From positions 70,432,001-70,496,000 of the forward strand of contig NC_043006.1 in NCBI RefSeq assembly GCF_006345805.1: DNA of 64,000 nt, written 5' to 3'. Below the pieces are notes generated by a model. The model ran no database searches and had not been told where the DNA came from. It worked only from the letters and a program-made list of their open reading frames with translations. Within the stretch, counting starts at the first letter, position 1. Each line of letters starts with the position of its first letter. Shown one piece after another: positions 6,206 through 56,491 of this stretch. The DNA is from Octopus sinensis (Eukaryota). The translations under genes were made by a program, and so were the position numbers.

Positions 6206-6269
6206 TGAATGTTTTCAGAGGGGACGGGGGAAGAGGAAGAATATTTTACTAATATTGTTGTTGTAGTTG

Positions 6270-6480
6270 TCATTTACTTCCAGGTAAGCACCATCATCAA
6301 GCAACACATCTGTCACCAATAATGTTCCAGCCATGACCATCCCATCTTTTCAGATACAGTGTTTCATAGACTATATTATTTGATGTGTCTTTTGCTTTTT
6401 TTTGTTATATTTTTAGGCTGTAAAGTGTGACTTGAGGGAGATTTGGTTACTATTTCCAGAAGGTCCAGTGACTGCAGAGA
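6270..6480 (+). mobile_element. Old dispersed repeat ('family G', about 200-250 bp); other decayed copies near 4870-5040(-), 27700-27900, 38500-38640, 43560-43740, 49890-50080(-), 50120-50290, 56520-56700, 60540-60615(-)
   Basis: Shared blocks ttccagc(c/t)(a/g)tgaccatcccatc and gtgtgatttgagggagatttgg.tgctatttc. Confidence 0.6.
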
Positions 6481-19704: not shown

Positions 19705-21135
19705 CTAGCAGAGGCGCCCGGTGTTGTCCGGGATTGAAATTTTTCCTTATATATAAGAAAACAGCAAAACATGTTGTATAGAAATTTGTTATTGTAAATT
19801 CAATTTATTCAGTTTGGATACAATTTATTCTTTAATTGGGAAATCAATTATGAATTCATAATACAAAATAATAATAATAATAATAACAATAATAATAATA
19901 ATAAACGGAAATACAAAATTTACCACTTTTATGAAAGGAGATAATTTCTACCACATGTTGCAGGAAACTATGTAGGGGCTATTGAGTAAACGACATTCTT
20001 TCGTTTTCTGGTTTGGAGCATAGACAAATAAGTCTTGCAAATTACCTACCCTGGAGCAACCACCAAAGTTGACCATGAGAAAAGCAAGCCAGTAGATTTC
20101 AAAGACTAACCTTGACCTTTATGAATAGACATTGCAAAGTGAAGTCGCACTGGGAATTGTGTTCGTTTGAACTGAAAGGGCATATCTGTTGATTTGATTG
20201 TTATTCTTGGAACAAAAGCTTCTTCCCCAGAGGCAAATCCAGTGATGATGGTAGCTTCTGTCACATTAGGGATAATGTCTTCTCAATAACCCTGTCCTAT
20301 CGCATAATTGAAGAGGATCTAAATTTCTTAGAAGTATTATTGAGACTCTTACCTTCAGAAAAACTTTATGTGGTGGAATTGCAGGTGGCTCCAGAGAATT
20401 AATGAACTCTGTTGGGTAATGGACAGCTTGATTTTCATCAAGGACTGAATCAACTGATTTGTACTTCTTAATGACTGTTGGAATCTTATTTATTCATGGT
20501 TAATTCTTACTACTGTGTCATTTTTTGGAGTAAGAATTGCCCTTTCACACAACCATTTATGTGAATTATAATTATTACTTAAGTCTGGCAATACCCTGTA
20601 CTTCAATTCAGCTGGAGAATTCACCATGATAGCAATATGAAGCAAACTGATATCACCATTCCCATCAAATGGTACTTTGCCATTTCATAATTGGAAGAGC
20701 CAGATTGAAAACTGTTTCACACATCAATCCCCATGTAATGAATCTCATACGTTAGTATTGAAGGAGAATTTCATTACTTTATTCCATAGGTGTGAAGACT
20801 TAATGCATGATTTTATTTTATCAGATCTTGTTCATGTCAGAATGACTGGTAATGTCTGTCTGAAGTCACTTGATAAAGCAAATGTAACTCCTCTCATAAA
20901 TTTATTGTTGCCTCTGATGACCTGTAAGATCTTACAAAGAACTTTCATTTGCACCTCTGTTACTTGGTGCATTCATCCCAAATGATCATGTGGCATTGGC
21001 ACAACACTTCTGCTGAACCTGAATCTTTGCTTATGTTACAAATTAGACTGTCACTTGTGACCAGGTTTAGTGGTAATTTAAAAGCAGAATGAGCTGTTCA
21101 TCCTACTGAAATAAACCTTATGGGCAATCCACAAA
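19705..21135 (-). mobile_element. Helitron RepHel remnant (PIF1-like helicase half) with intact 3' end
   Basis: Minus-strand motifs TAHSAFKLPLN, IIWDECT, YPTEFINSLEPPAIPPHKVFLKV..ILLRNLDP, FKRTQFPVRLHFAMSIHKGQG, GCSRVG; 3' hairpin CCCGG..CCGGG (19717-19732) and CTAG|T at 19705-19708. Confidence 0.92.
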
Positions 21136-22729: not shown

Positions 22730-23480
22730 ATTGTCGTCATCGTTTAACATCCGTTTTCCATGCGGGCATGGGTCGGATGGTTTGACTGGGGACTGGCAAG
22801 CCAGTAGGGTGCACCAGGCTCCAATCTGACCTGGCAAGCTTTCTACAGCTGGATGTCCTTCCTAACGCCAACCACTCTGAAAGTGTAGTGGGTACTTTTT
22901 ACATGCCACCAGCATAGGAGCCAGTCAGGCTGTACTGGCATCGACCATGTTTGGATGGCACTTTTTATATGCCACCGGCACTGAGAGCCAATCAGGTGTC
23001 ACTGGCATCAACCCACGCTTGAATGGTGCTTATTACATGTCACCAACAGTCAGGTGGTACTGACAATGGCAACAACTACAATTTCCATTTTGATTTCGAT
23101 CTTGATTTGCTTTAGATTTTGATTTTTGATTTTGTTTGACTCAATAGGTCTTCTCAAGCACAGCATATCGCCCGATAATTCCAAGGGACTTTTAAAATAG
23201 GATTATGCGAAACTGGCACAAGCTACAGCTGTGATCTCACTTTACTTGCCAGGTTTTCTCGATCACAGCATATCTCCAAAGGTCTCTTGTCATTGCCTCT
23301 GTGAGGCCCAACGTTTGAAGGTCATGCTTCACCACATCATCCCATGTCTTCCTGGATCTCCTTCCACTGTTAGGGTGTGATACTTCTTCACACAGCTCTC
23401 CTCATCTATATGCAGCACATAACCATGCCAGCGCAGTCGTCTCTCTTGTACACTATATCTGATGCTTCTTATGTCCAACG
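22730..23480 (-). mobile_element. 5'-truncated RTE LINE: RT C-terminus, 3' UTR and (GAT)n tail
   Basis: Minus strand VQERRLRWHGYVLHIDEESCVKK..TWDDVVKHDLQTLGLTEAMTRDLWRYAV runs directly into the family-B sequence. Confidence 0.88.
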
Positions 23481-23974
23481 TTTCTTATATTTCGCTGTTT
23501 GTGATGTTTTATCTTATGGATCTCCTATGTCTCACTTGCATCATGAACAATAGTTGAGTTTCCTGTCAAACACAGCTCACTCAACTATGTTCCAAGTTCA
23601 GCTACATGTTAACCCTGACCAAAGGATGTTCTTCTGCACTCACATTTATATTTCTGAAGCAAAATACCAAATGCTTGCTTCATCAACATCATTATCATTA
23701 TTTAATATCTGCTTTCTATGCTAGCATGGGTTGGATGGTTTGACTGGAACTGGTAGGCTGGAGAACTGCACCAGGTTCCAGTTTGATTTGGCATGGTTTT
23801 CTACAGCTGGATGCCCTTCCTAATGCCAACCACTCCAAGAGTGAAATGGGTGCTTTTAATTCCTACCAGTACGGGTGCCATTTGCATGACACTGGTATCT
23901 GCCATGGACGACAGGAGAAGCTAGAATGGTATGGAAGCTGAAAGAACTTTGATATTTCCTGGTAGTCTCAGTGT

Positions 23975-28843: not shown

Positions 28844-28852
28844 TTCCTACTG
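28844..28852 (+). CDS. 9-nt microexon TTCCTACTG of an unidentified host gene
   Basis: Very strong acceptor ctttccttctttctttctttcag, donor G|GTCAGT, frame-preserving length, TGC at 28819-28821. Confidence 0.7.
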
Positions 28853-30989: not shown

Positions 30990-31866
30990 ATCAAAATGCT
31001 TCAGGACTAGTCTTGTAGCATGACAACAGATGGCAACACATAGTTATGTGTGCAGTGAGAGCTAGCAGTGACCTTCATGAGGCAATGTGCCAAACGACAT
31101 CGCTGTGTTTCCTTCGCAAGTTGTGAAATTTGTGGTTTTGTGATCATGTGTATACGAATTTTGCCACAGACTGGAGGTTGGAACAAATAGCAAACGTGAA
31201 ATTTTGCATTAAACTTAGGAAGTCTGCTGCGGAGATATCAGGCATGCTTCAACAAGCTTACAGTGACGAGGTAATGCATTGTATGCAATGTTTGAAGTGG
31301 CATGGGCAGAACGTCCCTGGAAGATGTGTGATATGGAAGACCTACCATAAGCGTCACCTCTAGAAATGTGGAGAAAATTCATCGGCTTGTGTATGAGGAT
31401 CATCAGAGGACAATCAACAATGCTTTGAAGTATTCAAGGGAGGGCATTTGGTGAAAGCAACTCAATCTGTGGAACATGAAGAATTAGGTTCTTCATGCTG
31501 ACAATACACCCTGTCACTGAGCTTTCCTCACTTATGAGTTTCTCGCCAAAATCATAATATCACTTCTGCATCCACCCTATTTGACAGATTTAGCACCTGT
31601 GGACTTCCGTCTCTTGCCCCAGATGAAAATGCAGCTCAAAAGTTGCTGTTTTAACATCATTGTTAAAATCCAAAACGAATTGTAGATGGTCTGACTTGGT
31701 TACAGAAAACCACTTCCAGGTCAGATTCCAAAAGTGGCAGGGACACTGGGCCAGTGTATTGCTGCGCAAGTTGACTATTTTGAAGGAGATGATGTTAAAA
31801 TCTAGGTAAATGAGTTATTTTTTTAATAAACATAACTAGTCCAGGAACTCTTTGATACCACCTCAT
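30990..31866 (+). mobile_element. Degenerate mariner (DD34D-type) transposon with internal deletion
   Basis: EQIANVKFCIKLRKSAAEISGMLQQAYSDE; HADNTPCH; HPPYLTDLAPVDF; TIR remnants tcaaaatgcttcaggactagt / actagtccaggaactctttgataccacctca followed by TA. Confidence 0.85.
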
Positions 31867-33662
31867 ATATATATATATATAGATGCCAGTGCTGCCTTTA
31901 TTGGCTTCCGTGCTTGTGACACGTAAAAAGCACCATCCGGTTTTGGTTGATGCCAGCCTCCTCTATCCCCTGTGCCGGTGGCACCCACTACACTCTCGGA
32001 CCCTGGTGCAGCTTCCTGGCTTCCCAGACCCCAGTCAAACTGTCCAACCCATGCCAGCATGGAAAACGGACGTTAAATGATGATGATGATGATGTATATT
32101 AAAATATATTAAAATATATATATAAACCATGGTTTATCTAGTTACCTTGCAGTTGAATATTAATTGTAATATTCAATACTTTTTAAATAGGTAACTAACC
32201 AGTATTTTCATTGGATTTTATTATCCTTTAATCAGGTTTATAACCTTTATTTGAACTTATATATATATAATATAAACCCTGTGTTTACAGTTTTATAATT
32301 AAATTTTCTCTTCCCTTTCCAACTTCTGCCAGCATAGACAAATGGATTTTATGATGTGGTGATGGTGGCAGTTATAGTGGTAAGAATAACCTGATGATGG
32401 TAGGGGTGATGATGGTGATGGTTATGGTGCTGATAGTAAGGGTGATGATAATAATGGCAATGGTGGTGGTTGTAATGATATTGATGTCAATATTTTAGTT
32501 GTTGCTGTTGTCTTCTTCAGACTGCACCATGAAAATATTGTGTTAGTTATTGATCCCAGATGAAGGAAGAGGAGGAGGAGGAAGAGGAGTTGGTCATTGT
32601 GGTGATGGGTGGAGGTTATTTTGATAACGTTTGTAATGTTTTTAATTACACTAGTGTGTAAGAGTCTTTCTTTCATCTTCTATTTGTTTGTCACTGGACT
32701 GTGGCCAAACTGTAGCACTACCTTGAAGGGTTTCGTGAAACAAATTTACCCCAGTATTATTTCTGAGCCACTTGGTTACAGGAACATAAACAAACCAACA
32801 CCAGTTATCAAGATGTGGTGGGAGACAAATATAACACACACACATACACACACAAGGATACATGTGGCTGTGTGGTTAAGAAGCTTACTTCCCAACCATG
32901 TGGTCTTAGGTTCAGTCCCACTGTGTGGTACCTTGGACAAGTATCTTCAACTATAGCCCTGGAACAACTAAAGTTTATGAATGGACTTGGTAGATAGATA
33001 CTGAAAAAAAAAACCCTTCTGTGTTTGTGTGTGTGTATCTTTTATCTTTTCCTTGTTTCAGTCAGTTAGACTGTGGCCATGCTGGGGCACCATCTTGAAG
33101 AATTTTTAGTTGAAAGCATCAACCCTGGAATTTAGTTTAAGCCTAGTACTTGTTCTGTTGGTCTCTTTTGCCAAACTGCTAAGTTATGGAGACATACACA
33201 CAAGTGGCGGTGGGAGACAAACACAGACACACACATACATACATGTATGTAAATGTGTGTGTGTGTGTGTGTTTATACATGTACACACCATGGGGTTCCT
33301 TAACTTTCCATCTGCCAAATGCACTCACAAGGCTTTGGTTGGCCCAAGGTTATAATAGAAGACACTTGTCCAAGGTGTCAGGAAGTGGGGCTGAACCTGG
33401 AACCATGTGGGAGGGAAGCAAACTTCTTTACCACACAGCCAACTGATATATAAGTGTGGGTGTGTGTATATACATATGTATGTGCGCATGTTTGTGTGTG
33501 TGTTGCTGTATCTTTCCCCTGACATTGCATGACAGTTGGCTACATCATATTAGCTCTGTCCTTCATTCCTAATCTTCTGTGAAAATATCTGGTCATGAGG
33601 ATATTACATTTCTTGGGAATTGGTGAGGGTTGGCAAGAGGAAGGACATCTTGCTGTAGATTC

Positions 33663-33817: not shown

Positions 33818-33948
33818 AGATTATCACCTCAAGAAACTCTGTCTGACCAATGTGGGCATGGAAAAGTGAACAGTAATGATGATGATGTTTGTGTGTGTGT
33901 GTGTGTGTATTTGTCAATTTATTGATACTATTTATCTTTCTATTACAG

Positions 33949-34023
33949 GTAAGCCTTGCTGTTATGATATTTTGGGATATTTACCTTTTCATGTATTGAC
34001 CGAGCACCTGTCTTCATATCCAG
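33949..34023 (+). CDS. 75-nt phase-1/phase-1 exon (GKPCCYDILGYLPFHVLTEHLSSYP) of an unidentified host gene; starts with GTAAGC
   Basis: Acceptor tttatctttctattacag, donor CAG|GTAAGA; only the phase-1 frame is open, compatible with the upstream microexon. Confidence 0.65.
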
Positions 34024-34074
34024 GTAAGAACTTCTCTTTGTTGTTGTTGTTGTGAATGTTGACAATTATGTAAC

Positions 34075-34290
34075 TGCGAATCATGGTGATGTAAATGCTG
34101 TGAATAACTGTTTCTAATTTTGGCACAAGGCCAGCAATTTTAGGGGTCGGGGATTAGTCAATGTCATCTACCCTGGCACTCAACTGGTTCTTTATTTTAT
34201 CAACCTAGAGAGATGGAAGGCAAAGTCGATCTCAGTGAGATTTGAACTCGGAATGTAATGAGCCAGAAGAAATACTGCAAGACATTCCCC
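34075..34290 (-). mobile_element. SINE family C (tRNA head plus central gactttgcctttcatcc...gataaa..agtaccag domain); other copies 9870-10020(-), 37125-37312(-), 43280-43480(-), 44980-45130(+), 51170-51365(+)
   Basis: Conserved central block resembling, from memory, the Meta-SINE/Sauria-SINE core. Confidence 0.8.
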
Positions 34291-35060: not shown

Positions 35061-35539
35061 AAAAGAAGAAAGAGGGAAGACAGTTCAAAACAGCAGAATT
35101 CAATAAAGCACAATTCCAGCCGACAGTACTCCTGGCCTAGGGTAATCCACCAGCAGGAACAGAGCTCCACAAATTAGTACAATTCCATGAATTTCACAAC
35201 TTTTTGGTAAAATCCACAATTTTTGGTAAAATTCTACAAATTTTACAACTTTTTTGGAGGTGAAACAATAATGCTCAACTGCAAGCTGACAAATGTCTAG
35301 AATCCAGTGAGGACTTCTTGCCTGGGAAAAAATATTACACACCAAACCCTCAGTGGACCTAAAAAACAAAAGCTTTACCTTACAGTTGAGCTCTTTTTGT
35401 TAATAATTCACAGCTACAAAATAGCATGCAACTTCCTTAGTGCCAAGAACAACACTAACAATAGTGTATGCGTGTAAGCAGTAAGCAAGCTACTTACCAT
35501 ACAGCCACTTCTGTACTTACCACACAGACAAGCTACTTA

Positions 35540-36230
35540 ACACACAGACATGCCTGCGCGTGATCATGATTCTGAATGTTTTTCTACTGGTAAAGTGTTC
35601 AATTGACCCAAATAAGTGAAAATCTGACAGTCCTAAATTTGATGAATAGGAGGGGTGAGATAGAGCTTCGCAATTAAATGAATTTATCTTTTCTTGGGTT
35701 ATCTTGTTGAACACACTGCATTATTCTTGATGGTCAACTCATGAGATTCAAACTTCCCTTCACTATAGACTTTTTAATCTGCTTGAGATGATTTTGTACA
35801 ATGGACCACAGTTTATTATGCTCCTGGGTTACTTCCCCAATACTTTGTTGGGGATCCTCTTCAGTTGCTGTTTTTATGGCATCGTTAATGAGAACAGTTG
35901 GTCTTCCTAATCAATACCCATCCAAAAGATTGAAATCACCATTTTTTAATTTGGTAAACCACTTTTGGCATTTCCGAATACTCACACAATCAGGATAGAC
36001 AATGCATTTGAGGAGGTTCTGAGAAGTTCCTAACTTTAGGTAAAAGAAAATACAGGAGGATCAGTTAATTATGGTCTTATTCAACATATTCTCCTTTCAG
36101 ATTGACACAATTATTGCAGCAGTCCTTCAGTTTTTCTAAGCCCTGTGAAAGAACACTGAAGGTGGGGCCTCCAACCAGGCCTTTCGTGATACCCTTAAAG
36201 CCAGGAACTTTTCAGCACCTTCTTGTATGT
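35540..36230 (-). mobile_element. Degenerate mariner remnant
   Basis: ALSHPSYSSNLGLSDFHLFGSIEHF (HPPYSPDLAPSDF motif); GRPTVL..EEDP; TIR-like tacaagaaggtgctgaaaagttcctggcttt near 36200-36230. Confidence 0.75.
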
Positions 36231-37454
36231 TTTCGCTTGCATTGTTGCCATTATGAAATTTGTAAAGCAAGCAATGCTGAATAGAGCTCACTAAAGTCCT
36301 CATCTTCACTGGCCAGTCAGATAGAACATACACACGCACAGCATATGTCCACGTTAATGTTTGGTCGTAAACTCTATGCTGATGAGTTGATTGCAAAGGG
36401 ACCTTTTATTAGCTTGTAAACTATTTCTATTACGACGTCAGACTACTTACTTTGAAAATACAACATTACTTTTTGGTACACTTAATATCAAATGGATGTC
36501 TTATAAAACTGTTCTGCACATACAATAACAGCCATGCCAACATCCAACATACCTCCATCATCAGCTGCCTTATGGACATCACTATGGTTTTGACACCCGG
36601 GCAGTACCATTCAATCCGGCAGTGTGAACAACACTAAAATAAGTGCTGTTTGGAAACAAACATACCATAGATATCACTACATTCATTCAATCTTAATTCT
36701 AGGAAGAATTAAACACTAACATCATTAATTAACCTATAACAAAGAAACACATTTACCCTATGTACAAAAACAGCATCTGTAAATTAATTCAATAAGTAAA
36801 CCTATAATTAACTCCTAAATTATCTAACTAAATAGTGACCTAGCCCTTGAAGTCCATGCAGATAATATTCCCACCAGTCTTCCATAGTTATTGATATAAA
36901 AGTGAAAGCTTTATATTCTAGTCTTTCCAAAACAAAACAAATTCGATTGAACTTAACTAATAACTAATTCTAATTACACTATTTCGTAACCCAAATAATT
37001 AGAACACTCCATACGTATTAAATATTCGTTATCCTAACATGTTTTAATGTTAAACTTATACCTGTAATTTAATAGATAATACTAAAATATCCTTATTAAA
37101 TCATATATATTAGTTTCAAATTTTGACACAAGGCCATCGAATTCGTAGGAGGGGGTTGAGTCAATTGCATCGACCCCAGTGTTCAACTGGTACTTATTTT
37201 ATCGACCTCGAAAAGATGCAAAGTGAAGTCAACGGAATTTGAACTGAGAACGTAAAGACAGACGAAACATCACAAAGCATTTTGTCCAGTATGCTAACAA
37301 TTCTGCCAGCTTCCCTAATATATTTCCAGTCATCTACTAAGTTTGATTTAAGCAACTTAACCCATTCCATTACATCTTATATCTGTGGGCTCTCTCTTAA
37401 ATGTGATTAATCATTTTTATATAGTTTTGTGAGAAAAATAGAGATCATTTTACA

Positions 37455-37560
37455 TTTGATTCTCTCCAGCATAACGAAGCTGCATTTGAATCAAGAAGAA
37501 TGTGGTGTAGGCGAGCATGAAATCCCACACAGTCATGTGTCTGTGTTTGTTTATACGGGT
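37455..37560 (-). mobile_element. Possible LINE APE-endonuclease fragment; a similar one at 52290-52480(-)
   Basis: GDFNA-like motifs (GFHAR.. ; IGHFTAKSRSF) with frameshifts. Confidence 0.35.
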
Positions 37561-37706
37561 TGTTTTTGCTTCACACACATCACTGTCAGTATTGGGTCCT
37601 CTTCTGTATCCCTGCCACTTAAGAAGATGCCTGCCTGTTGTGAGGTTAACAGGTTTGAACCGACAGGTCAAGCAACGTTGATGAGAGGCTGATTCACTTT
37701 CTCCAG

Positions 37707-37753
37707 GGATGACATACAACTGTCTTCTTTCTTTCTTTCTTTCTTTCTTTCCT

Positions 37754-37823
<70 letters not shown>

Positions 37824-37905
37824 TTCTTTCTTTCTTTCTCTCTTTCTTTCTTTCTTTCTTTCTTTCTTTCCTTCTTTCCTTCTTTCTTTCTTTCTTTCTT
37901 TCTTA
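37707..37905. repeat. (CTTT)n microsatellite
   Basis: Directly visible. Confidence 0.98.
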
Positions 37906-38101
37906 ATCTCTCTCTCTCTCTCCTCCCTCTATCTTTCTTCTGCCTCTTTCTCTCTCTCCCTTACGCGTTCTATCTCTCCTTCTTCCTCTACACACACACA
38001 CACACACACACTCCCTCTCTCTCCACATGCATAAATGCAAACATGCACAAACACATAACATTCTCTCTCTCTCTCAATCCCTCCTTGCATTATATTCTGT
38101 T

Positions 38102-38143
<42 letters not shown>

Positions 38144-46369: not shown

Positions 46370-47246
46370 CAGGGTACAGTGAATAAACTGTCATCTAAAT
46401 TACGCAAAAATGAAAATAACACTAACATTTCATTGATGTTATATAGCAGATGTATTTAACAAAATTACATAAACAATATCTGGAAATACGAAATAGTAAA
46501 TTTATTCAATAAAATCGTCATTGGCTTCAATTACAGCTTCCAGATGACTTCAGAGCCTCCTACAACTTTTCTGGATGGTCTCCATATTTAAGTTGGTGAA
46601 TGCTGCCATAATCCTTGCCTTCAGTTCATCTTTGGTGTTACAAGGAGTTTTGTTGGCCTCTTGCTCAACTGTGCCCCACACGTAATAATCAAGGAAGCTG
46701 CAGTCTGGGGAGTTAGGTGGCTAGATGTTAAAGGTGATGTGGAAATTGTCTGACAGCCATGACTAGGTTCTCCTGCTTGTGTGGCATGGTGCAGAATCCT
46801 GTTGCTAGACATAGGGTGTTCCAGCAGCCACCCTCTTGACACAGGGCAGCATTACCACCTCCAGGCACTTGATGTAGGCCTCTGTGTTGAGTCTGAGGCT
46901 GTGTGGGAAGATGAATGGAGGCATAACATCACCATCACTAGTGATTACTCCAAACATCACGATGTTGACTGGATGTTTGATTTTTATCAAACATCCAGTA
47001 CATATCCTCAAATTGACACCCAAACACTCTGAAATGTTGGTATTGGAACTTCTGGTATGATGCCAAGCAGTACATCATGTCATTTCCAAATTTCTGACAG
47101 TGTGGATTGCGTCATGGTGCTGTTCTTCTTACAGACAGTGCCCAACTGACCCTACTATACTGTGTAGTTGACAAAATCAAAAACAAACAATGTGCGTGTG
47201 TGAAAGTAAAAATATAAAATGGTGACAATTTACCCATCGCAACCTA
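46370..47246 (-). mobile_element. Degenerate maT (DD37D-type) Tc1/mariner transposon
   Basis: TA-flanked imperfect TIRs; minus strand VMFGVITSDGDVMPPFIF..YV*QQDSAPCHTS..I*PPNSPDCSFLDYYVW. The D-D gap is 35 residues here, presumably after a 2-codon deletion. Confidence 0.8.
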
Positions 47247-56414: not shown

Positions 56415-56491
56415 AATAATTTTCTGTTTCTTTATTTCAGGTAAGTGTTTGGTTTGTCCTTCCAAAAATATATTGAATCTTTACTGTGAGT
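56415..56491 (+). other. Recursive splice site (ratchet point) TTTCAG|GTAAGT with a putative 45-nt cryptic exon 56441-56485
   Basis: tttctgtttctttatttcag immediately followed by GTAAGT; a second donor ACT|GTGAGT at 56486. Confidence 0.65.

What the first reader, a model, noticed from the sequence alone, without database searches (positions are those of the whole stretch)
33931..34029. In-frame exon that begins with a 5' splice site: candidate recursive (RS) exon coupled to the microexon
The acceptor at 33948 is followed by GTAAGC. Joining the microexon gives ACTG|GTAAGC, regenerating a strong donor, so the 75-nt exon can be removed by recursive splicing or kept through the donor at 34024 to add GKPCCYDILGYLPFHVLTEHLSSYP (with a CC motif). 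The upstream exon chosen sets the strength of the rebuilt donor, the logic known for vertebrate RS-exons and Drosophila ratchet points. I am not aware of this being described in molluscs.
Basis: partly seen in the sequence, partly recalled or inferred. Interest (0 to 1): 0.8.

Follow-up and report, generated by a model that had tools for sequence, protein, structure and literature searches.

The report
Octopus exon starting with a splice donor
A 75-base stretch is an annotated exon of a huge, probably non-coding Octopus vulgaris gene and begins with a splice-donor sequence, so it could be removed stepwise ("recursively"), but nothing here shows that this happens, and the proposed microexon link and added peptide are not supported.

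Summary
The sequence is as described: ...ttacAG|GTAAGC at 33948|33949, a 75-nt open frame, and CAG|GTAAGA at 34023|34024.

- **Exon use.** A search of 1.84 billion proteins found one real match, CAI9727689.1, a 73-aa "hypothetical predicted protein" of Octopus vulgaris. It contains the 25 residues exactly and departs from the genome at both proposed boundaries. So an annotated model uses the exon.
- **Host gene.** The gene spans 239 kb. Its product has no domain and no relatives, and the partner exons lie outside the window. It is probably non-coding.
- **Microexon.** The microexon at 28844-28852 is incompatible with that model and sits between simple repeats.
- **Strength of the rebuilt donor.** It is about median, weaker than the exon's own donor. 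This predicts mostly inclusion.
- **Second site.** 56441 (+) reads tttctgtttctttatttCAG|GTAAGT, with a weak GTGAGT donor 45 nt downstream. That is the anatomy of a fly ratchet point. About 0.003-0.04 such sites are expected per strand of the window.
- **Strand bias.** All four CAGGTAAG in the window are on the + strand, each behind a pyrimidine-rich stretch.

Recursive splicing is plausible here but untested. Exons of this kind make up a few percent of annotated human exons. I rate it a new member of a known kind, of modest interest.

The parts
33919..33948 (+). 3' splice site of the exon: T-rich pyrimidine tract (tattgatactatttatctttctattacAG). yTnAy branch-point candidates lie 14-27 nt upstream, and the 73 nt before the AG contain no other AG.
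   Evidence: acceptor score 12.1, top 6 of 3396; pyrimidine-tract score in the top 1.6% of all window positions.
33949..34023 (+). 75-nt internal exon, phase 1 to phase 1. It encodes residues 18-42 of the O. vulgaris hypothetical protein CAI9727689.1. It is single-copy within the window and lies between repeats.
   Evidence: 25/25 identity; the protein's flanks differ from the genomic flanks exactly at both ends.
33949..33954 (+). GTAAGC at the first six bases of the exon. This is the core of a 5' splice site that would be rebuilt once the exon is joined to an upstream exon (candidate RS-5'ss).
   Evidence: score 11.9 in genomic context; 8.8-9.4 with the upstream exon end G-Y-G deduced from P0001; about the median of consensus-model donors.
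34024..34029 (+). The exon's own 5' splice site, CAG|GTAAGA.
   Evidence: score 11.1, top 6 of 4290; the protein leaves the genomic frame here.
56420..56446 (+). Ratchet-point-like site in the intron downstream of the exon: ttttctgtttctttatttCAG|GTAAGT, preceded by 131 nt with no AG. Joining the exon (which ends ...CAG) here would rebuild CAG|GTAAGT.
   Evidence: best juxtaposed site in the window; 0.003-0.04 expected per strand; score 12.6; pyrimidine-tract tail 0.0115.
56441..56491 (+). Candidate cryptic RS-exon of 45 nt (56441-56485) ending at a weak donor, ACT|GTGAGT (56486-56491). It has stop codons in two of three frames.
   Evidence: (donor score 6.8).
6262..6289 (+). Weaker juxtaposed site, tagttgtcatttacttCCAG|GTAAGC, in the intron upstream of the exon. 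No donor scoring 5 or more lies within 400 nt downstream.
   Evidence: pyrimidine-tract tail 0.07; AG-free zone only 15 nt.

Best explanation
Bases 33949-34023 form a genuine internal exon of a + strand Octopus vulgaris transcription unit of about 239 kb. The gene model gives CAI9727689.1, a 73-aa product. Its open reading frame is probably meaningless, so the RNA is most likely long non-coding or mis-called.

The exon sits between introns of at least 34 kb and 30 kb.

Likely mechanism:
1. The exon is recognised by exon definition: a strong pyrimidine tract and AG at 33948, plus the strong donor at 34024.
2. It is ligated to the upstream exon.
3. Because it begins with GTAAGC, that ligation rebuilds a 5' splice site (G-Y-G|GTAAGC) of about median strength.
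4. This site competes with the stronger CAG|GTAAGA 75 nt downstream.
5. The exon is therefore mostly kept, as in the annotated model. Removal through the rebuilt donor would be a minority or regulated outcome.
6. The downstream intron is probably removed in at least two steps through the fly-type ratchet point at 56441. There the rebuilt CAG|GTAAGT (12.6) far outscores the cryptic donor 45 nt downstream (6.8).

Shown here: the sequence anatomy, use of both exon boundaries in an annotated model, gene size, and absence of protein relatives.

Inferred: transcription of the whole window on the + strand, competition between the donors, and any recursive step.

My sub-probabilities:
- The exon is real: 0.8.
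- The rebuilt donor at 33949 is ever used: about 0.3.
- 56441 is a working ratchet point: about 0.4-0.45.
For: - Sequence features are as described.
- P0001 matches the exon 25/25 and departs from the genome exactly at 33949 and 34023.
- P0001 is CAI9727689.1 of O. vulgaris, on a 119-Mb chromosome.
- The gene range is 239,016 bp, with no other gene called in the 259-kb locus.
- No 6-residue word of P0001's flanking peptides is encoded in the window, so the partner exons lie outside it.
- The annotation pipeline drew on RNA-seq and Iso-Seq. Its median intron is 2,467 bp (PMC10700109).
- Splice-site ranks.
- Juxtaposed strong acceptor/donor sites occur at 33949 and 56441 on the + strand only, against 0.003-0.04 expected.
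- All four CAGGTAAG octamers are on the + strand. Their upstream pyrimidine scores are in the top 1-10% of window positions, with Fisher p = 7e-4 for all four and 0.0065 for the two intronic ones.
- Donor competition scores.
- The anatomy matches the published definitions of RS-exons and ratchet points (PMC8605326; PMC6224609).
Against: - No RNA data could be examined.
- The bare octamer count (4) equals the chance expectation (3.7).
- Pseudo-exons this good occur in 1.5-7.5% of simulated strands.
- Exons that rebuild a donor are a few percent of annotated exons in humans, and most are simply included.
- No skipping isoform protein is in the database.
- The weight matrix is generic, not trained on octopus.
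- Conservation in other cephalopods could not be tested.
- 6284 lacks a downstream donor.
- The motif-based p-values are post hoc.
Confidence: 0.5

Rival explanations
1. This is an ordinary, constitutively included exon. The exon is real, but GTAAGC at its start is a coincidence. The rebuilt donor is never used, because it is outcompeted by the stronger downstream donor or masked as in vertebrates. The site at 56441 is a chance match.
For: - The exon is included in the only annotated model, and no skipped isoform was found.
- The exon's own donor (11.1) outscores the rebuilt donor (8.8-9.4).
- Putative RS-exons are 1.7-4.9% of human annotated exons and are mostly constitutive.
- The CAGGTAAG count is at chance level.
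Against: - A second, textbook juxtaposed site lies on the same strand in the next intron, against about 0.02 expected.
- All four octamers are on the + strand with pyrimidine-rich upstream sequence.
- The flanking introns are at least about 12 times the annotation's median intron length. That is the setting where recursion is known.
Confidence: 0.3
2. This is an annotation artefact. No stable spliced RNA uses this segment. A gene predictor chained chance splice-like signals and short open frames across a gene desert, giving a meaningless 73-aa model.
For: - The product is 73 aa from a 239-kb gene, has a low-complexity C-terminus, no Pfam domain and no relatives.
- Augustus and GeneMark-ES were part of the pipeline.
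- Pseudo-exons this good arise in 1.5-7.5% of random strands.
Against: - Ab initio prediction was run on the repeat-masked assembly. The pipeline also added transcript-based PASA updates. A three-piece model with introns over 30 kb is not a typical ab initio output; that is my inference.
- It is the best exon-like pair in the window on either strand.
- An independent ratchet-like site lies on the same strand.
Confidence: 0.15
3. This is the reader's full version: a protein-coding cassette exon whose recursive removal is set by the 9-nt microexon at 28844-28852, and which adds a functional Cys-Cys peptide to a protein.
For: - The frame is open and 75 nt is a multiple of three.
- The microexon has a strong acceptor (13.5) and would rebuild CTG|GTAAGC (9.8).
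Against: - P0001's junction (...SHC|G) excludes the microexon.
- The microexon's signals are parts of simple repeats. Its donor is weak (7.2), and similar tiny AG..GT pairs are common in the window.
- No domain and no homologue exist for the peptide. The three other hits are a satellite-like tandem-repeat translation, an ankyrin repeat protein and a bacterial repeat protein.
Confidence: 0.03

Closest known systems
Annotated (expressed) RS-exons of vertebrates (Sibley et al. 2015; Blazquez et al. 2018, PMC6224609)
   Same: [quoted passage not shown]
- Its own downstream donor competes with that site.
- It sits in a very long gene with long introns.
- Inclusion is predicted when the exon's own donor is the stronger.
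   Different: - The host is a mollusc gene model of doubtful coding value.
- No MaxEntScan threshold for octopus was available.
- There are no data on exon-junction-complex dependence, lariats or skipping.
Drosophila intronic ratchet points with cryptic RS-exons (Hatton 1998; Burnette 2005; Duff 2015; Joseph 2018/2021, PMC8605326)
   Same: - The site at 56441 has the full (Y)nCAG|GTAAGT motif.
- It lies inside an intron of at least 30 kb, on the gene's strand.
- A weaker donor follows 45 nt downstream; fly cryptic RS-exons are about 50 nt.
- The rebuilt donor is much stronger than the cryptic one.
- The Ubx m1/m2 microexons are the closest analogue of an expressed RS-exon like 33949-34023.
   Different: - Fly ratchet points are defined by sawtooth RNA-seq, recursive intermediates and ultraconservation. 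None of these could be examined here.
- The lineage (Lophotrochozoa) has no reported case in the library searched.
Chance pseudo-exons in long introns
   Same: It is short, lies between transposon-derived repeats, and has an open frame without protein homology.
   Different: - The splice-site scores are the best in the window.
- Both boundaries are used in an annotated model.
- Pseudo-exons are not normally in annotated coding models.

Membership tests
Putative RS-exon (definition of Blazquez et al. 2018) | The segment is an exon of an annotated or expressed transcript. | tested here: met
   CAI9727689.1 contains the 25 residues and leaves the genomic frame at both boundaries. Whether the model rests on transcripts is unknown.
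Putative RS-exon (definition of Blazquez et al. 2018) | The junction with the preceding exon rebuilds a 5' splice site at or above the score reached by 90% of the species' canonical donors. | tested here: inconclusive
   With the upstream exon end G-Y-G deduced from ...SHC|G, the rebuilt site scores 8.8-9.4. That is about the median of donors drawn from a generic consensus matrix and within the top 0.8% of GT sites in the window. No MaxEntScan and no octopus donor set were available, so the species threshold itself was not computed.
Recursively spliced exon (validated) | The rebuilt donor is used: RS lariats, spliceosome footprints, or skipping that depends on the GT at the exon start. | not testable with these tools
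   No RNA reads are accessible. The only indirect result is that no skipped-isoform protein is in the database.
Recursively spliced exon (validated) | A long upstream intron that is removed before the downstream one. | tested here: inconclusive
   The upstream intron is at least 33.9 kb, because P0001's N-terminal peptide is not encoded in the window. The order of removal cannot be tested.
Drosophila-type intronic ratchet point (applied to 56441) | Juxtaposed acceptor and donor consensus, (Y)nNCAG|GTAAGT. | tested here: met
   tttctgtttctttatttCAG|GTAAGT. Acceptor score 12.9, donor score 12.6, the best in the window, against 0.003-0.04 expected per strand.
Drosophila-type intronic ratchet point (applied to 56441) | Location inside a long intron, on the sense strand of the host gene. 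| tested here: met
   The site is 22.4 kb downstream of the exon, on the same strand. The next coding piece of P0001 is not in the remaining window. This rests on the gene model being right.
Drosophila-type intronic ratchet point (applied to 56441) | A short cryptic RS-exon with a weaker downstream donor. | tested here: met
   ACT|GTGAGT lies 45 nt downstream and scores 6.8, against 12.6 for the rebuilt donor.
Drosophila-type intronic ratchet point (applied to 56441) | Sawtooth intronic RNA-seq profile and recursive intermediates; strong conservation of the motif. | not testable with these tools
   No RNA-seq data and no second cephalopod genome were reachable.
Alternatively spliced microexon (applied to 28844-28852) | Inclusion in a transcript, between the flanking exons claimed. 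| tested here: not met
   It is absent from P0001 and incompatible with its junction codons. It lies between a (CTTT)n-like tract and a (TG)n microsatellite.
   No Pfam family. There are no relatives of 40-128 aa. Among 1.84 billion representatives, the only other hits are unrelated repeat proteins.

The most novel reading that the evidence does not exclude
Octopus removes its very long introns by fly-style recursive splicing. On this reading the window shows one 239-kb gene carrying an expressed RS-exon (33949-34023) and one or two zero-length ratchet points (56441, perhaps 6284) on the same strand. That would be the first case in a mollusc or any lophotrochozoan. It would suggest that recursive splicing is ancestral to bilaterians or recurs wherever introns grow long.
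Probability: 0.3. Interest if true: 0.55.

Novelty: new member of a known kind. Interest (0 to 1): 0.35.

Why it matters
Recursive splicing has been documented in flies and vertebrates. No paper in the library searched mentions it for molluscs, cephalopods, octopus or lophotrochozoans.

Cephalopods have large genomes. This annotation contains genes with introns of tens of kilobases.

A concrete locus with an expressed RS-type exon and a textbook ratchet-like site gives cheap, specific tests: junction and lariat reads, and RT-PCR of intermediates. These would show whether the mechanism operates in a third major animal lineage.

By itself, an exon that starts with a donor-like sequence is a common pattern and says little.

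Tried and rejected
1. **Other host-gene exons in the window.** I looked through stop-free segments, composition ranking and splice-pair ranking. Nothing convincing turned up. The protein-like segments are transposon remnants; one is confirmed as a Pif1 2B domain.
2. **The other three protein hits to the peptide (P0002-P0004).** They are a tandem-repeat translation, an ankyrin repeat protein from a metagenome and a repeat protein of a Dehalococcoidia MAG. I rejected them as chance matches to repeated short motifs.
3. **Relatives or a skipped isoform of P0001.** The search returned only P0001 itself.
4. **Fetching the whole gene around P0001.** No DNA was served because the range is over 100 kb. 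The partner exons and their exact ends therefore remain unknown.
5. **The exon or the three juxtaposed sites as copies of one repeat.** The exon is single-copy in the window, and the sites are no more alike than shuffled sequence.
6. **Rfam scan of the window.** No family was found.
7. **Bare motif enrichment.** CAGGTAAG occurs 4 times against 3.7 expected, so it is not enriched. Only the strand and the upstream pyrimidine context stand out.
8. **X-padded searches for longer proteins containing the peptide.** I did not run them. The all-against-all HMMER search had already seen every representative, and the expected gain was small.

Full report
**What is in the sequence.**
The window looks like cephalopod DNA: GC is about 0.38 and 42% of it is repeated within the window. 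The described features are present to the base:
- ...ctttctattacAG|GTAAGCCTTGC... with the AG at 33947-33948.
- A 75-nt segment, 33949-34023, open in only one of three frames.
- ...TATCCAG|GTAAGA with the GT at 34024-34025.

The exon is therefore phase 1 at both ends. The 9-nt TTCCTACTG at 28844-28852, flanked by tttcag and gtcagt, also exists.

**Is it more than chance?**
I used a generic consensus weight matrix written from textbook metazoan frequencies. It is not MaxEntScan and was not trained on octopus.
- The acceptor scores 12.1, among the 6 best of 3396 AG sites on the + strand.
- The donor at 34024 scores 11.1, among the 6 best of 4290 GT sites.
- The donor-like sequence at 33949 scores 11.9.
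- The pair is the best exon-like pair on either strand.
- An open pseudo-exon of this quality still appears in 1.5-7.5% of Markov-simulated 64-kb strands.
- A site combining an acceptor and a donor this strong at the same phosphodiester bond is expected only 0.003-0.04 times per strand of the window.

The exon is single-copy in the window. It lies between a (TG)n microsatellite with an upstream repeat and a SINE-like repeat at about 34110-34290.

**External evidence that the exon is used.**
I ran a full HMMER search of a 33-residue translation around the exon against 1.84 billion representative proteins. It returned one strong hit, P0001 (73 aa, E = 1.4e-10).

Its sequence is MVIEQSQEKKGAKASHC-GKPCCYDILGYLPFHVLTEHLSSYP-EWMRMTIKVPAMWRLTVIMMIMMLNMNWAIG. 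The middle 25 residues equal the exon. The genomic frame reads ...YLSIT before the exon and GKNFSLL... after it. The protein therefore leaves the genome exactly at 33949 and at 34023.

P0001 is CAI9727689.1 / A0AA36B4Z0, "Hypothetical predicted protein [Octopus vulgaris]", on a 119.3-Mb chromosome of GCA_951406725.2. The window is therefore most likely from that locus; this is my inference from the 25/25 identity.

**The host gene.**
- It spans 239,016 bp, yet the product has 73 residues.
- No other gene is called in the 259-kb locus.
- No 6-residue word from either flank of P0001 is encoded anywhere in the window. The neighbouring coding exons are therefore more than 33.9 kb upstream and more than 30 kb downstream. 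The annotation's median intron is 2,467 bp (PMC10700109).
- P0001 has no Pfam domain and no relatives of 40-128 aa in 5.8 billion clusters. Its C-terminus is low-complexity.

I therefore read the ORF as probably meaningless. The transcription unit is likely non-coding or mis-called.

The annotation pipeline combined StringTie/TACO/PASA assemblies from RNA-seq and Iso-Seq, TransDecoder, Augustus and GeneMark-ES on the masked genome, EVM and PASA updates. I cannot tell whether this particular model rests on transcripts.

**The microexon and the peptide.**
P0001 reads ...S-H-C|G across the upstream junction. Its upstream exon therefore ends TG(T/C)G, not ...ACTG, and the microexon is not part of the only model.
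- The microexon's "acceptor" is the end of a (CTTT)n-like tract, similar to the microsatellite at 37.7-37.9 kb.
- Its "donor" (gtcagt, score 7.2) is followed about 20 nt further on by a (TG)n run.
- Tiny AG..GT pairs of this quality are common in the window.

The three other protein hits to the peptide are unrelated and are chance matches to repeated motifs. They are a satellite-like translation, an ankyrin repeat protein and a bacterial repeat protein. Nothing supports a functional Cys-Cys peptide.

**The recursive-splicing reading.**
[quoted passage not shown] Such exons are 1.7-4.9% of annotated human exons and are mostly constitutive. They are about two-fold rarer in flies (PMC6224609).

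Scores for this exon:

| Site | Score |
|---|---|
| Rebuilt donor with P0001's upstream exon (G-Y-G\|GTAAGC) | 8.8-9.4 |
| The exon's own donor (CAG\|GTAAGA) | 11.1 |

The rebuilt donor is about the median of donors drawn from the consensus matrix. The exon's own donor is at about the 79th percentile. Under the donor-competition rule established in flies and mammals (PMC8605326), this predicts mostly inclusion. That agrees with the annotated model and with the absence of a skipped-isoform protein. The exon has RS-exon anatomy, but recursion at this exon is not favoured by its own numbers.

**A stronger candidate nearby.**
It is 56441 on the same strand: ttttctgtttctttatttCAG|GTAAGT, with acceptor score 12.9 and donor score 12.6.
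- It is preceded by 131 nt without an AG, partly because of an (ATA)n run.
- It is followed 45 nt later by a weak donor, ACT|GTGAGT (6.8).
- The 75-nt exon ends in CAG. Splicing it to 56441 would rebuild a perfect CAG|GTAAGT (12.6) that far outscores the cryptic donor.

That is the configuration of Drosophila intronic ratchet points with cryptic RS-exons of about 50 nt.

A weaker site lies at 6284 (cttCCAG|GTAAGC, acceptor score 9.6). It has no downstream donor within 400 nt.

All four CAGGTAAG octamers of the window (6284, 33949, 34024, 56441) are on the + strand. The count itself, 4, equals the chance expectation of 3.7. What stands out is their upstream pyrimidine content. The empirical tails are 0.07, 0.016, 0.10 and 0.0115. 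Fisher's combined p is 7e-4 for all four and 0.0065 for the two intronic sites. These p-values are post hoc.

The three sites are not copies of one repeat. The + strand also has about 5% more T than A in 7 of 8 bins. From my own knowledge of transcription-associated strand asymmetry, this fits its being the sense strand, but it is weak evidence.

**Verdict.**
- The exon is very probably real.
- The microexon coupling and the coding significance are not supported.
- Recursive splicing is a reasonable but unproven mechanism. It is more likely for the intron downstream (via 56441) than for removal of the 75-nt exon itself.

No paper in the held library links recursive splicing to molluscs, cephalopods, octopus or lophotrochozoans. 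A confirmed case would extend a known mechanism to a new lineage. I class it as a new member of a known kind, with modest interest (0.35). The decisive data are junction, lariat and sawtooth evidence from existing O. vulgaris RNA data, and conservation in other octopus genomes. None of these were reachable with the tools.

Noticed in passing
window 56420-56491 (+): A textbook ratchet-point-like site, tttctgtttctttatttCAG|GTAAGT, with a weak GTGAGT donor 45 nt downstream.
   Followed up: partly
window 6262-6289 (+): A third, weaker juxtaposed site, cttCCAG|GTAAGC, with no downstream donor within 400 nt. It lies in the presumed upstream intron.
   Followed up: partly
window 6281, 33946, 34021, 56438 (+): All four CAGGTAAG octamers of the window are on the + strand and all follow pyrimidine-rich sequence, although the count itself is at chance level. 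The exon's own donor at 34024 also looks like an acceptor (score 8.9) because the 3' end of the exon is pyrimidine-rich.
   Followed up: yes
window 20109-20684 (-): Three adjoining stop-free segments resemble a Pif1-type helicase. One of them matches the Pfam Pif1 2B domain at E = 2.9e-7. By my reading this is a decayed Helitron-like transposon remnant.
   Followed up: partly
window 31127-31360 (+), 35520-35910 (-), 46553-46720 (-), 23240-23484 (-): Short open segments look by eye like mariner/Mos1 transposase pieces and a LINE reverse-transcriptase tail. Only a sub-threshold Mos1 HTH match (E = 0.009) was obtained; the others gave no Pfam hit.
   Followed up: partly
window 37450-38140 (both strands): A long (TTTC/GAAA)-type simple repeat gives 'KERKKERKK' or 'FFLSFFLS' pseudo-ORFs of up to 150 codons.
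   Followed up: no
whole window: The + strand has about 5% more T than A (AT skew -0.05) in 7 of 8 eight-kb bins, including the non-repeat fraction. GC skew is about zero. This fits the + strand being the sense strand of a long transcription unit, but only weakly.
   Followed up: partly
window 33000-33450 and about a dozen other places: A SINE-like repeat family is present in 12-15 copies, in both orientations. Altogether 42% of the window matches another part of the window.
   Followed up: no
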